Below, one piece after another: positions 46,813-49,362 of a stretch of 64,000 bases of DNA (its first letter is position 1; each line of letters opens with the position of its first letter). Source of the stretch: Octopus bimaculoides. Lineage: Eukaryota. The translations under genes were made by a program, and so were the position numbers. The stretch spans positions 54,301,242 to 54,365,241 of the forward strand of contig NC_068996.1 of the NCBI RefSeq assembly GCF_001194135.2, given 5' to 3'. A model generated the notes under the pieces. It did no database searches, was not told the origin of the DNA, and was given only the letters and a program-made list of their open reading frames with translations.

Positions 46813-47346
46813 GCAGTGGCTCTCATGGCTTTTGATCTTAATTGATTGGAAGTGTTACCATGTACAGTGTTTTGTCTAGGTATAAAAGATGGGCTACAGT
46901 AAATATTCTGCTCAATATCACAGATTTACTTGTCAGTTGCTTGACCTTAACCAGTTGAGCATGTCTCTTAATGGCTGACGAAATGTGCATCTCTGATCAT
47001 GAGCAGAAGTAGTGGGGGAGCATCATAGCCATGTGTTGAGAAGAATTAACCCTTGGAAACATGGGTGTTTCATGCAACATTCTTAAGCAACCCTTATTCA
47101 GGGACCTTTTAAGCGGGATGGGTTACTCAACTTGATGAAAATTCTAACTGGGCCCCGCCTGCGAGGTCATGCGCTGTTTATCTTGATATGAGACCACTAT
47201 GTCGCGCACATATGGTTGTTATGCATGTGCCTGGTGTACCCTTATCAGACGGGTAGTCATGATGGGTATAATGGGCTTCGTACACTTTACCCCAGTGTCA
47301 CTTTGATGGCATTCATTGCTCTCTCACTCAATAGTAATAATAATAA
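46813..47346 (+). mobile_element. ~550-bp non-coding element copy 1, 5'-truncated, (AAT)n tail
   Basis: Reverse complement of 47347-47879; ends ctctctcactcaatagtaataataataat. Confidence 0.75.
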
Positions 47347-47899
47347 TGGGAGAGCAGTGCATGCCATCAAAGTGACACTGGGGTAAAATGTACGAAGCCC
47401 ATTATACCCATCATGACTACCCATCTGATAAGGGTACACCAAGCACATGCATCACAACCATATGTGCGCGACATAGTGGTCTCATATCAAGATAAACAGC
47501 GCATGACCTCACAGGTGGGGGCCCAGTTAGAATTTTCTTCAGGTCGAGTAGCCCATCCTGCTGAAAAGGTTCCTGAATAAGGTTTGTTTAAGGATGTTGA
47601 ACGAAACACCCATGTTTCCAAAGGTGAATTATTCAAACACTAACTAATTCTTCTGAACACATGGCTATGATGCTCCCCCACTACTTCTGCTCATGATCAG
47701 AGATACACATATCGTCAGCCACCAAGGGACATGCGCAACTGGTTAAGGTCAAACAACTGACAAGTAAATCTGTGTTATTGAGCAGAACATTTGCTGTAGC
47801 CCATCTTTTATACCAAGTAAAACAATGTACATGATAACACTTCCAATCAGTTAAGATCAGAAGCCATGAGAGCCACTGCCTGGTACTGCATCTGGGCAT
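47347..47899 (-). mobile_element. ~550-bp non-coding element copy 2, longest copy
   Basis: Inverted relative to copy 1 and in tandem with copy 3, separated by attattatt. Confidence 0.75.
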
Positions 47900-48334
47900 A
47901 ATTATTATTGAATGAGAGAACATGCCATCAAAGTGACACTAGGGTACAATATACGAAACCCATTATACCCATCATGACTACCCGTCTGATAAGGGTACAC
48001 CAGGCACACGCATCACAACCATATGTACGCGACATAGTGGTCTCATATCAAGATAAACAGCGCATGACCTCGCAGGTGGGGCCCAGTTAGAATTTTCTTC
48101 AGGTCGAGTAGCCTATCCTGCTGAAAAGGTCCCTGAATAAGGTTTGTTTAAGGATGTTGAACGAAACACCCATATTTCCAAAGGTGAATTATTCAAACTC
48201 GAAAGAATTCTTCTCAGCACATGGCTATGATGCTCCCCCACTACTTCTGCTCATGATCAGAGATGCACATATTGTCAGCCACCAAGGAACATGCTCAAAT
48301 GGTTAAGGTCAAACAACTGACAAGCAAACCTGTG
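47900..48334 (-). mobile_element. ~550-bp non-coding element copy 3, 5'-truncated at a (TAA)n array
   Basis: Direct repeat of copy 2 up to caagcaaacctgtg, then (TTA)n at 48335-48349. Confidence 0.75.
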
Positions 48335-49362
48335 TATTATTATTATTATGATACTCAAGTAAATCCTAATTACTGATTTTTCTTTACTTGACATCAGATA
48401 ATGACAAATTAAAAAATTAAAGTAAGGCTCTGTCTTTGGTATTTCTCTATCTTTGGTATTTCTCTATCTTTACTAGTGATCTCACCTTCGAATCATCTGG
48501 CATCGCAACAGCTATGGTCTAAACCATTTTTTTCATCTTTATCAATGAGCACAATATCTTGTCTCTATGACCTGGTCACATTGTATATTAACATCCAAGA
48601 GGATTTTATATTGTTCATTTTCCAGTACTCCATCATTATTATTATTTATAAAATATGCGTTAATAATGAAAACATACCTCCTATAATTTCAATGGTAAAA
48701 TTAAAGAGGTCATAAAAGCAATCTGAAAATAATTTCTAACTATTGAACACCTTGAAGAGTAGAAATTCTCCTCATTATTCAAAAGACGAAGCAGTGTTCA
48801 TGGTATAATTGCATTTTTTTTTTTTTTAGTTTATGCTTGTAGATAACAGTAAGAAAGAAGAGTTTAAATAGATATAAATTCGTCTCTATAATATGATGAA
48901 TAAAATTGATATATCATGTTTAAAAATAAATCAAAGTTGATGTAATTATGTTGAATATAGAGTGCAAATGAATAATAAAACGGCGCTTTATATATTGCTA
49001 GGAAAATATTCTTTTAATATTGGTGCCTAACGCTTGCCTGATGAATCATGTTTCAGAGATTCTTAGCTTGCGCTTTTTTTATTATTTTCTTTATTTAATT
49101 TCAACATTAAATTAAATTAAATTTTTGTAAATCTCGTTGATTCACAAGATAATGCGTTAATAAGAGTTTACTTTATTTGATACAAAAGATAAAAATAAGC
49201 TTTTTGTTTCTTTTTTTTCCAAAATATTAAAAGCATATGTTGCACGTAATGAGGTAAATAGTGTATCACCTAACTATTGTTTCAAGTTTGCATAATTTAG
49301 AGTTTAAGATTTTATTATCTTATTGATTAATAATATTTTCTTCTCCTTTTTCCTATTTACAG

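What the first reader, a model, noticed from the sequence alone, without database searches (positions are those of the whole stretch)
46813..48349. A ~550-bp non-coding, non-tRNA element that behaves like a TAA-targeted retroposon: candidate Dong-dependent partner
Seen: three copies directly adjoining the R4/Dong stack. The element ends ctctctca(t/c)tc-(AAT)n; copies 2 and 3 are tandem with attattatt between them; copy 3 is 5'-truncated exactly at a (TTA)n array with tatt microhomology; copy 1 is 5'-truncated against the RT YIDD motif of Dong copy 3. No pol III boxes, TIRs, convincing ORF or visible similarity to the Dong 3' UTR were found. Established: 5' truncation plus a simple-repeat tail indicates target-primed reverse transcription, and non-autonomous partners are known for R2. 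Inference: a microsatellite-targeted non-autonomous RNA mobilised by an RLE element. Alternatives are the 3' UTR of another LINE family or Penelope-type terminal repeats, which also form inverted-plus-tandem arrays.
Basis: partly seen in the sequence, partly recalled or inferred. Interest (0 to 1): 0.75.

Follow-up and report, generated by a model that had tools for sequence, protein, structure and literature searches.

The report
Short retroposon nested in Dong stack
Three copies of a roughly 550-base non-coding mobile element sit inside a pile of Dong retrotransposons that all landed in one (TAA)n microsatellite, so the element probably inserts the same way, but three copies at one site cannot show whether it is a separate parasite of Dong or just the tail end of an unseen Dong-like element.

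Summary
Three copies (89-94% identical) lie at 46813-47329 (+), 47348-47899 (-) and 47910-48335 (-). They start at element positions about 21, 1 and 125. Copies 1 and 3 end in ...ctctca(c/t)tc followed by (AAT)n. The element has no tRNA, Rfam family, usable ORF or protein homologue, and no similarity to any Dong sequence in the window.

New here: the copies are embedded inside the Dong stack (44244-48646), not beside it. A fourth, degenerate Dong fragment lies upstream. Copies 2 and 3 have the same orientation relative to the microsatellite as every Dong copy. That supports target-primed insertion into (TAA)n, most plausibly by Dong-type machinery.

The claim of a discrete non-autonomous partner is only partly supported. 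For it: the 5' ends cluster within 125 nt, and Dong 3' UTRs here and in relatives are only 75-240 nt. Against it: there are only three copies at one locus, no promoter, no 5' HDV-like ribozyme and no 3' end shared with Dong. No other copy was found in any searchable collection.

The main rival, 5'-truncated 3' ends of an unseen (TAA)n-specific LINE, stays open. Moderate interest; the decisive test is a genome-wide pile-up of copies.

The parts
46813..47329 (+). Element copy 1. It is inverted relative to the rest of the stack, starts at element nt ~21 and lacks a 19-nt internal segment. Its 5' end is joined head-to-head to the 5'-truncated end of Dong C.
   Evidence: junction
47330..47347 (+). 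Tail of copy 1, AATAGTAATAATAATAAT. It is the only (AAT)n tract in + sense in the whole window.
47348..47899 (-). Element copy 2, 552 nt, the longest copy. Its 5' end is ATGCCCAGATGCAGTACC. Its 3' end is ...GCACTGCTCTCCC, which lacks the last ~5 nt and has no sense-oriented (AAT)n tail.
47900..47909 (-). AATAATAATT, which is both the tail of copy 3 and the 5' flank of copy 2.
47910..48335 (-). Element copy 3. It starts at element nt ~125 with A/T microhomology to the upstream microsatellite and ends ...GTTCTCTCATTC.
48336..48349 (-). (ATA)n, which is both the 5' flank of copy 3 and the 3' tail of the degenerate Dong fragment upstream.
48436..48646 (-). 'Dong D', a degenerate fragment of the restriction-like endonuclease domain (48436-48628). 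It is preceded by (AAT)4 at 48635-48646 and forms the upstream end of the stack.
45413..46812 (-). 'Dong C', 5'-truncated at LFYIDD. It carries the RT thumb and a CCHC zinc finger, lacks the RLE region, and has a 239-nt 3' UTR ending ...aaaagccaaacatat.
45325..45412 (-). (AAT)~30 between Dong C and the next Dong copy.
44341..45324 (-). 'Dong BA', one 5'-truncated copy covering the RLE motif RPDIVVKD through ...AHILRKILSM*. It has a 178-nt 3' UTR and is interrupted by an assembly gap (44707-45201) and an internal (AAT)8 (44660-44683).
44244..44340 (-). Terminal (AAT)n(GAT)n(AAT)n microsatellite, the downstream end of the stack.

Best explanation
The repeat is a short (about 0.55 kb), non-coding, non-LTR retroposon family that integrates by target-primed reverse transcription into (TAA)n microsatellites. 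It most likely borrows the restriction-like endonuclease and reverse transcriptase of a Dong-type LINE.

Shown:
- There are three copies with a common 3' end and graded 5' truncation.
- Copies 1 and 3 carry sense-oriented (AAT)n tails.
- Copies 2 and 3 have (TAA)n on both sides and the same orientation as four Dong fragments in one 4.4-kb stack.
- The element has no coding capacity.

Inferred:
- The element RNA ends in (UAA)n. That tail pairs with the nicked (TTA)n strand, and cDNA synthesis often stops early. The 5' end is then joined through A/T microhomology.
- About 552 nt is close to full length.
- The enzyme comes from a Dong family. This may be one not present in the window, or recognition may rest mainly on the (UAA)n tail, since no 3' UTR is shared.
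- The inverted copy 1 is best explained as a twin-priming-like event. The upstream DNA end at the 3' end of copy 2 primed on an element RNA while the downstream nick primed on Dong C RNA. The two cDNAs then met head-to-head at 46812/46813.
For: - Copies and boundaries.
- All (TAA)n tracts of 4 or more units in the window are in minus sense and adjoin Dong 3' ends. The only plus-sense tract is copy 1's own tail.
- The copies are embedded between Dong D and Dong C.
- Dong identity of the neighbours rests on RT, CCHC and RLE motifs. Homologues end in ...AHILRKxLS and are each followed by (TAA)n; the closest solved structures are R2 proteins.
- Dong is (TAA)n-specific (PMC3812793). Bombyx Dong has (TAA)n upstream in the same sense orientation (PMC3774820).
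- For a discrete short unit, the three 5' ends fall within 125 nt. If they were random truncations of a long LINE, the probability is about 0.004-0.13.
- 3' UTRs of this Dong lineage are 75-112 nt in three other species and 178-239 nt here, against 552 nt of non-coding sequence in the element.
- The sense strand folds somewhat better than shuffles (z -1.85) and the antisense strand does not (z +0.59).
- Each copy carries private substitutions (20/8/16 of 401 columns), and the boundaries coincide with microsatellite junctions. This fits separate insertions rather than a block duplication.
Against: - There are only three copies, all in one locus. No other copy was found in proteins, metagenomes, prokaryotic genomes or viral contigs. 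None of these collections holds the host genome, so a multicopy dispersed family is not demonstrated.
- All three 5' ends differ, so a fixed 5' end is not shown.
- No transcription or processing device is visible. There is no tRNA, 5S or 7SL head, conserved T4 runs would stop pol III, and no HDV-like ribozyme was found.
- There is no similarity to the 3' UTRs of the Dong copies present, whereas R2-type enzymes recognise their own 3' UTR (PMC3747384, PMC3414825).
- Copy 1 carries more private changes than copy 2. That fits the proposed order of events only if copy 1 came from another subfamily.
Confidence: 0.4

Rival explanations
1. The three copies are ordinary 5'-truncated 3' ends of an autonomous (TAA)n-specific LINE that is not otherwise present in the window. 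This would be another Dong family with an unusually long 3' UTR of at least 552 nt. The element is then not a separate parasite.
For: - Every Dong copy in the window is 5'-truncated, to lengths of about 0.3-1.6 kb.
- The three 5' ends all differ.
- There is no promoter or ribozyme of its own.
- A 3' end unrelated to the local Dong families implies a cognate enzyme elsewhere if recognition is stringent (PMC3747384).
- Several Dong-R4 families coexist in cephalopod genomes (PMC13282606), if the host is one.
Against: - 552 nt without coding signal is 2-7 times the 3' UTR length seen in five Dong-type elements.
- The 5' ends cluster within 125 nt.
- No copy reaches coding sequence.
Confidence: 0.35
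2. The element belongs to, or is moved by, a LINE with a different endonuclease that makes its own (TAA)n tail, such as an I-, RTE- or CR1/L2-type element. Its tails seeded or enlarged the microsatellite, which Dong then colonised. The association with Dong would be secondary.
For: - LINEs outside the R4 clade also end in (TAA)n or other microsatellites. The I element does so, and RTE makes microsatellite families (PMC3747384, PMC2887409).
- An octopus RTE has a 3' UTR of about 600 nt (PMC9115989).
- Copy 1 carries its own tail in the 'wrong' orientation for this locus.
Against: - Copies 2 and 3 both have pre-existing (TAA)n upstream, namely the tail of Dong D and the tail of copy 3.
- They share Dong's orientation.
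- All copies in 64 kb lie in the one (TAA)n stack and none lies elsewhere.
- No such LINE 3' end occurs in the window.
Confidence: 0.12
3. The sequence is not mobile. It is a local sequence that was duplicated in tandem and inverted by recombination or replication errors within an unstable microsatellite region, or it is a fragment of a ~560-bp satellite.
For: - All copies are within 1.5 kb.
- Copies 2 and 3 are spaced 560-561 bp apart.
- No copy was found anywhere else.
- The assembly is a gapped draft.
Against: - Each copy boundary coincides with an element end plus a microsatellite, and no Dong flank was co-duplicated.
- The 5' ends differ while the 3' ends agree.
- The copies differ by 6-9% with private changes in each, so they are not an assembly artefact or a recent duplication.
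- The element is 44% GC against roughly 26-40% in the 2-kb windows around it.
Confidence: 0.06
4. The copies are terminal repeats of a Penelope-like element, which often form tandem-plus-inverted arrays.
For: The arrangement is tandem plus inverted.
Against: - No hammerhead ribozyme at E<=10.
- No PLE reverse transcriptase or GIY-YIG ORF is nearby; the whole interval 44244-48646 is accounted for by Dong fragments, microsatellite and the element.
- The ends carry simple-repeat tails.
Confidence: 0.02

Closest known systems
R2 SIDEs (short internally deleted elements; non-autonomous partners of the RLE-type LINE R2; PMC3414825)
   Same: Non-coding and a few hundred bases long. Found at the same specific target and in the same orientation as an RLE-type LINE, and presumably moved in trans by its protein.
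   Different: SIDEs keep the 5' HDV-like ribozyme and the 3' UTR of their R2 parent. This element shows neither a ribozyme nor any similarity to the Dong copies at hand.
Dong of Bombyx mori and other R4-clade, (TAA)n-specific LINEs (PMC3812793, PMC3774820)
   Same: Same target microsatellite, same orientation relative to it, frequent 5' truncation and tandem stacking.
   Different: Dong encodes RT, CCHC and RLE and has a 5' ribozyme that cleaves at the TAA/Dong junction. This element encodes nothing and has an unrelated 3' end.
SINE/LINE pairs with microsatellite tails, such as UnaSINE1/UnaL2 (TGTAA)n (PMC3747384)
   Same: A short non-autonomous RNA whose repeat tail takes part in priming.
   Different: Those SINEs have a pol III head and share the LINE's 3' stem-loop. 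Here there is no pol III head, there are internal T4 runs, and no shared 3' end is seen.
L1 twin priming (5' inversion of LINE insertions; from my own knowledge, Ostertag and Kazazian 2001)
   Same: An inverted segment that begins with the tail at the upstream junction and meets a 5'-truncated sense segment head-to-head.
   Different: In L1 both segments come from one RNA. Here they would come from two different RNAs, the element and Dong C.

Membership tests
Classical SINE | Pol III-type head derived from tRNA, 5S or 7SL RNA | tested here: not met
   ARAGORN found no tRNA. cmscan against Rfam at E<=10 found only hairpin artefacts.
Classical SINE | No internal pol III terminators (T4 or longer) in the sense strand | tested here: not met
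   T4 runs lie at nt 79, 334 and 513 of copy 2, and two of them are conserved in other copies.
Classical SINE | 3' end shared with a partner LINE | tested here: not met
   blastn and nhmmer found no similarity to any LINE sequence in the window. A partner outside the window cannot be excluded.
R2-SIDE-type non-autonomous derivative of an RLE LINE | Same target site and orientation as the autonomous element | tested here: met
   Copies 2 and 3 lie in (TAA)n in Dong's orientation, inside a Dong stack.
R2-SIDE-type non-autonomous derivative of an RLE LINE | HDV-like self-cleaving ribozyme at the 5' end | tested here: inconclusive
   Rfam gave no hit. My structural descriptor found nothing above shuffled controls. 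The same descriptor found candidates in only 2 of 4 genuine Dong-like 5' ends, and Rfam found none of them, so sensitivity is limited.
R2-SIDE-type non-autonomous derivative of an RLE LINE | 5' and 3' ends derived from the parent LINE | tested here: not met
   No similarity to Dong C, BA, D or the copy at 62240-63832. No full-length Dong 5' end is available in the window.
R2-SIDE-type non-autonomous derivative of an RLE LINE | Discrete full length with a fixed 5' end across many copies | tested here: inconclusive
   Three copies start at nt 1, ~21 and ~125. The clustering is suggestive only.
5'-truncated copies of an autonomous Dong-type LINE | Longer copies continue upstream into the RT/RLE reading frame | not testable with these tools
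   No further copy was found in any collection, and the host genome is not searchable here.
Penelope-like element terminal repeat | Hammerhead ribozyme in the repeat and a PLE RT/GIY-YIG ORF between repeats | tested here: not met
   No hammerhead at E<=10 and no such ORF nearby.
Dong/R4-clade LINE (the neighbouring copies) | RT followed by a CCHC finger and a C-terminal restriction-like endonuclease, with insertion in (TAA)n | tested here: met
   LFYIDD and the thumb are present. The CCHC finger C-x2-C-x7-H-x4-C gave a sub-threshold zf-RVT hit. RPDIVVKD is present. Homologues carry RVT_1, and R2 proteins are the nearest solved structures. (TAA)n lies at every 3' end. No phylogeny was made.

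The most novel reading that the evidence does not exclude
The head-to-head junction of inverted copy 1 with the 5'-truncated Dong C would be the fossil of a single integration event. It has copy 1's own tail at the far end and no residual target microsatellite on either side. In that event one Dong protein complex reverse-transcribed two RNAs, its own and the element's, from the two DNA ends. That would be direct evidence that a Dong-type RLE LINE mobilises in trans an unrelated RNA that shares only the (UAA)n tail. It would mean relaxed, tail-based template recognition in a clade thought to be stringent, and it would define the first non-autonomous partner described for the R4/Dong clade.
Probability: 0.12. 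Interest if true: 0.65.

Novelty: new member of a known kind. Interest (0 to 1): 0.35.

Why it matters
Non-autonomous partners are documented for R2 (the SIDEs). I found none described for the microsatellite-specific R4/Dong clade in the open literature searched.

A confirmed partner that shares no 3' UTR with Dong would bear on how RLE-type reverse transcriptases choose their template. That question is relevant to current efforts to use R2-like enzymes for site-specific insertion.

If the element is only the 3' end of another Dong family, it is routine repeat annotation. Its value is then limited to showing how (TAA)n tracts grow into multi-element stacks inside an intron.

Tried and rejected
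- Six-frame translation of the element against 5.8 billion proteins gave no hit. The aim was to reach other copies through mis-called ORFs.
- Exact-word scans of metagenome contigs (two words), prokaryotic genomes and viral contigs gave nothing except one chance 20-mer in an Embleya chromosome.
- The host could not be identified:
  - The Dong protein has only 53% identity to anything in the collection.
  - The EAG channel exon has its best hit at 96% aa and 82% nt, in unnamed Logan contigs.
  - The run accessions of those contigs are not cited in any held paper.
- Rfam searches turned up only miRNA-like hits at 47268-47405, which are artefacts of the inverted repeat.
- A home-made HDV-like descriptor found nothing above shuffles. 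I used genuine Dong-like 5' ends from other species as the positive control, and no viral ribozyme sequence.
- RNAalifold on the last 160 nt showed no compensatory pairs. Three near-identical sequences give it no power.
- Supplements of two octopus repeat papers were checked for the element or for an RTE 3' UTR. Neither is held.
- The apparent extension of RT homology into copy 1 (to 46904-46922) proved to be alignment noise.
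Full report
**Observation.** The window is a gapped, AT-rich draft of an animal genome.

A self-comparison finds exactly three copies of the repeat and nothing else in 64 kb (blastn; nhmmer with a three-copy profile, E 1e-164 to 1e-203). The alignment and the raw sequence give these coordinates:
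- Copy 1: + strand, 46813-47329.
- Its tail: AATAGTAATAATAATAAT, 47330-47347.
- Copy 2: - strand, 47348-47899, 552 nt.
- Spacer: AATAATAATT (read on the - strand), 47900-47909.
- Copy 3: - strand, 47910-48335.
- Then (ATA)n, 48336-48349.

In element coordinates the copies start at nt ~21, 1 and ~125. All three reach the 3' region. Copies 1 and 3 end ...CTCTCA(C/T)TC followed by (AAT)n. Copy 2 ends ...GCACTGCTCTCCC, about 5 nt short, and abuts the complement of copy 1's tail.

Over 401 shared columns the copies differ by 6-9%, with private changes in each (20, 8 and 16). They are therefore neither an assembly artefact nor a recent block duplication.

**The surroundings.** On the minus strand the whole interval 48646-44244 reads as follows:
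- (AAT)4
- 'Dong D', a degenerate restriction-like-endonuclease fragment (48436-48628)
- (ATA)5
- copy 3
- (AAT)3T
- copy 2
- (ATT)6
- inverted copy 1
- 'Dong C' (46812-45413, from LFYIDD through the thumb and the CCHC finger, then a 239-nt 3' UTR)
- (AAT)~30
- 'Dong BA' (45324-44341, from RPDIVVKD to AHILRKILSM*, with a 178-nt 3' UTR, interrupted by an N gap and an internal (AAT)8)
- (AAT)n(GAT)n(AAT)n

The element copies are therefore embedded in the stack, not merely next to it.

Every (TAA)n tract of four or more units in the window is in minus sense and adjoins a Dong-like 3' end, including a separate one at 9446-9484. The only plus-sense tract is copy 1's own tail.

The neighbours are Dong-type by several criteria:
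- Their closest homologues (about 53% identity, from cnidarians, a shrimp, a killifish and many unnamed contigs) carry RVT_1, the CCHC finger and the RPDIV...D...K endonuclease, and end in AHILRKxLS.
- The nearest solved structures are R2 proteins.
- In three such loci from other species, each element is followed after a 75-112-nt 3' UTR by (TAA)n, and further copies are stacked behind it.
- The literature held here confirms that Dong targets (TAA)n (PMC3812793). Bombyx Dong has (TAA)n immediately upstream of its 5' end in the sense orientation (PMC3774820).

**What the element is not.**
- It has no tRNA.
- It has no Rfam family at gathering score. At E<=10 the only hits are miRNA-like ones centred on the copy1/copy2 hairpin.
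- It has no hammerhead or HDV-family hit.
- Its longest ORF is 80 aa, and that ORF spans a copy junction.
- All six frames are full of stops, and a six-frame query found no homologue among 5.8 billion proteins.
- It shows no similarity, even with 7-nt words, to any Dong sequence in the window.

The sense strand carries T4 runs, two of them conserved between copies. A pol III transcript could hardly cover the unit, so it is not a classical SINE.

Nothing supports the Penelope alternative. There is no hammerhead and no PLE ORF, and the interval is fully accounted for by the parts listed above.

**Evidence that it is a (TAA)n-targeted retroposon.**
- The 3' end is constant and the 5' end is graded.
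- The tail is a simple repeat.
- A/T microhomology marks the truncated 5' junction of copy 3, and a possible 2-nt AG overlap marks that of copy 1.
- (TAA)n lies on both sides of copies 2 and 3, in Dong's orientation.
- All three copies in 64 kb sit in the one microsatellite stack. (TAA)n makes up under 1% of the window, so two or three untargeted insertions there would be very unlikely.
- The sense RNA folds slightly better than shuffled controls (z -1.85), and the antisense does not (z +0.59). This fits the assigned orientation but is weak evidence.

**Separate partner, or the tail end of a LINE?** This is the crux, and the window cannot settle it.

For a discrete ~0.55-kb unit:
- The three 5' ends fall within 125 nt. 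If they were independent truncation points of a long LINE, that would happen with probability about 0.004-0.13, depending on the assumed truncation scale.
- The 552 nt of non-coding sequence is 2-7 times the 3' UTR length of the five Dong-type elements examined.

Against a discrete unit:
- The sample is three copies at one locus, with three different 5' ends.
- No promoter is visible.
- No HDV-like ribozyme is detectable, whereas Bombyx Dong and R4 have one at their exact 5' end (PMC3774820) and R2 SIDEs keep theirs (PMC3414825).
- No 3' end is shared with the Dong copies present.

The ribozyme test has limited power. Rfam also missed the 5' ends of four genuine full-length Dong-like elements. 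My structural descriptor recovered a candidate in only two of them. That candidate is a P1 helix from nt 3-9 with a compensatory A:T to G:C change between L006 and L008. At the element's 5' end the descriptor found nothing above shuffled controls.

**The inverted copy.** Copy 1 and its tail are inverted relative to the microsatellite. The tail lies at the far end, against the slightly shortened 3' end of copy 2. The truncated 5' end meets the truncated 5' end of Dong C with no microsatellite left between them.

A later inversion would need both breakpoints to fall exactly on element ends. A twin-priming-like event explains the structure in one step. In that event the downstream nick primes on Dong C RNA, and the upstream DNA end primes on the (AAU)n tail of an element RNA. 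The two cDNAs are then joined.

This is inference only. It is also somewhat at odds with copy 1 carrying more private changes than copy 2, unless copy 1 came from another subfamily. Its 19-nt deletion would fit that.

**External evidence.**
- No further copy could be reached.
- The host was not identified.
- A SINE-like repeat at about 61870-62100 resembles a repeat in an Octopus vulgaris transcript. Dong-R4 LINEs are abundant and recently active in octopus (PMC13282606, PMC8967140). A cephalopod host is therefore a reasonable lead, no more.
- If the host is a cephalopod, an octopus RTE with a ~600-nt 3' UTR (PMC9115989) is a further candidate parent. Its sequence is not held here.

**Comparison and verdict.** The element works like an R2 SIDE: a non-coding passenger at the specific target of an RLE-type LINE. 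It fails or leaves open the features that define a SIDE, namely ends derived from the parent and a 5' ribozyme. It is not a classical SINE and not a Penelope repeat.

- Best reading (0.40): a short non-autonomous retroposon moved by Dong-type machinery into (TAA)n.
- Main rival (0.35): 5'-truncated 3' ends of an unseen (TAA)n-specific LINE.
- Lesser rivals: a tail-making LINE or SINE of another clade that seeded the microsatellite (0.12), local duplication (0.06), and a Penelope repeat (0.02).

A single genome-wide search would decide it.

Noticed in passing
window 49363-49788 (+): Exon of an EAG-type (KCNH1/5-like) voltage-gated K+ channel, covering transmembrane segments S1-S3. The best database hit has 96% aa identity. 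The Dong/element stack lies in the intron just upstream, antisense to the gene.
   Followed up: partly
window 45652-45700 versus 44512-44700 (-): Dong C goes from the CCHC finger (...YIYWVICKE) straight to AVHILRKILSM*. It therefore lacks the whole restriction-like endonuclease domain that Dong BA retains, and is an internally deleted copy or subfamily.
   Followed up: partly
The (AAT)8 sits inside the coding region (...YKNKTT-N8-VIGALGM...), and an N gap hides the middle of the copy.
   Followed up: yes
window 9446-9520 (-): A separate (AAT)13 is preceded by ...gagcaaaaatat, which resembles the Dong 3' end. It is probably a very short 5'-truncated Dong insertion.
   Followed up: partly
window 62240-63832 (-): Another Dong-like RT copy, 43-49% identical to the same homologues, runs towards the window end. 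Its C-terminus is cut off and no (TAA)n follows it.
   Followed up: partly
window ~61870-62100 (-): A SINE-like repeat ending in a (TA)n/(CATA)-type tail. Its start (tcttttatcttttacttgttttagtcttgggctgcggtcat...) resembles a repeat in an Octopus vulgaris transcript from a paper supplement, which hints at a cephalopod host.
   Followed up: partly
window ~60990-61140 (-): A sequence whose reverse complement (+ strand) reads ...cacacggtttcgggttcagtccc, which looks like the B-box of a tRNA-derived SINE. ARAGORN does not call a tRNA there.
   Followed up: no
window 12769-14540 (-) and 6488-6879 (+): Remnants of more distant LINE reverse transcriptases, about 25-35% identical to the Dong homologues. 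They were not classified.
   Followed up: no
window 47268-47405: Rfam E-value hits to several miRNA precursor families (MIR7127, mir-1278, mir-3119 and others). They are artefacts of the tail-to-tail inverted repeat of copies 1 and 2, and all are below gathering score.
   Followed up: yes
L006:5077-5260 and L008:791-970: Two full-length Dong-like elements from other species share a 5' end. In it, nt 3-9 (A[A/G]GGTCA) can pair with TGACC[T/C]T about 160 nt downstream, with a compensatory change, next to a 3-bp hairpin. This is a candidate HDV-like ribozyme with a long J1/2 that Rfam does not detect.
   Followed up: partly
window 48428-48471: A 17-bp tandem repeat (CTCTATCTTTGGTATTT x2.6) lies inside the degenerate Dong D fragment.
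   Followed up: no
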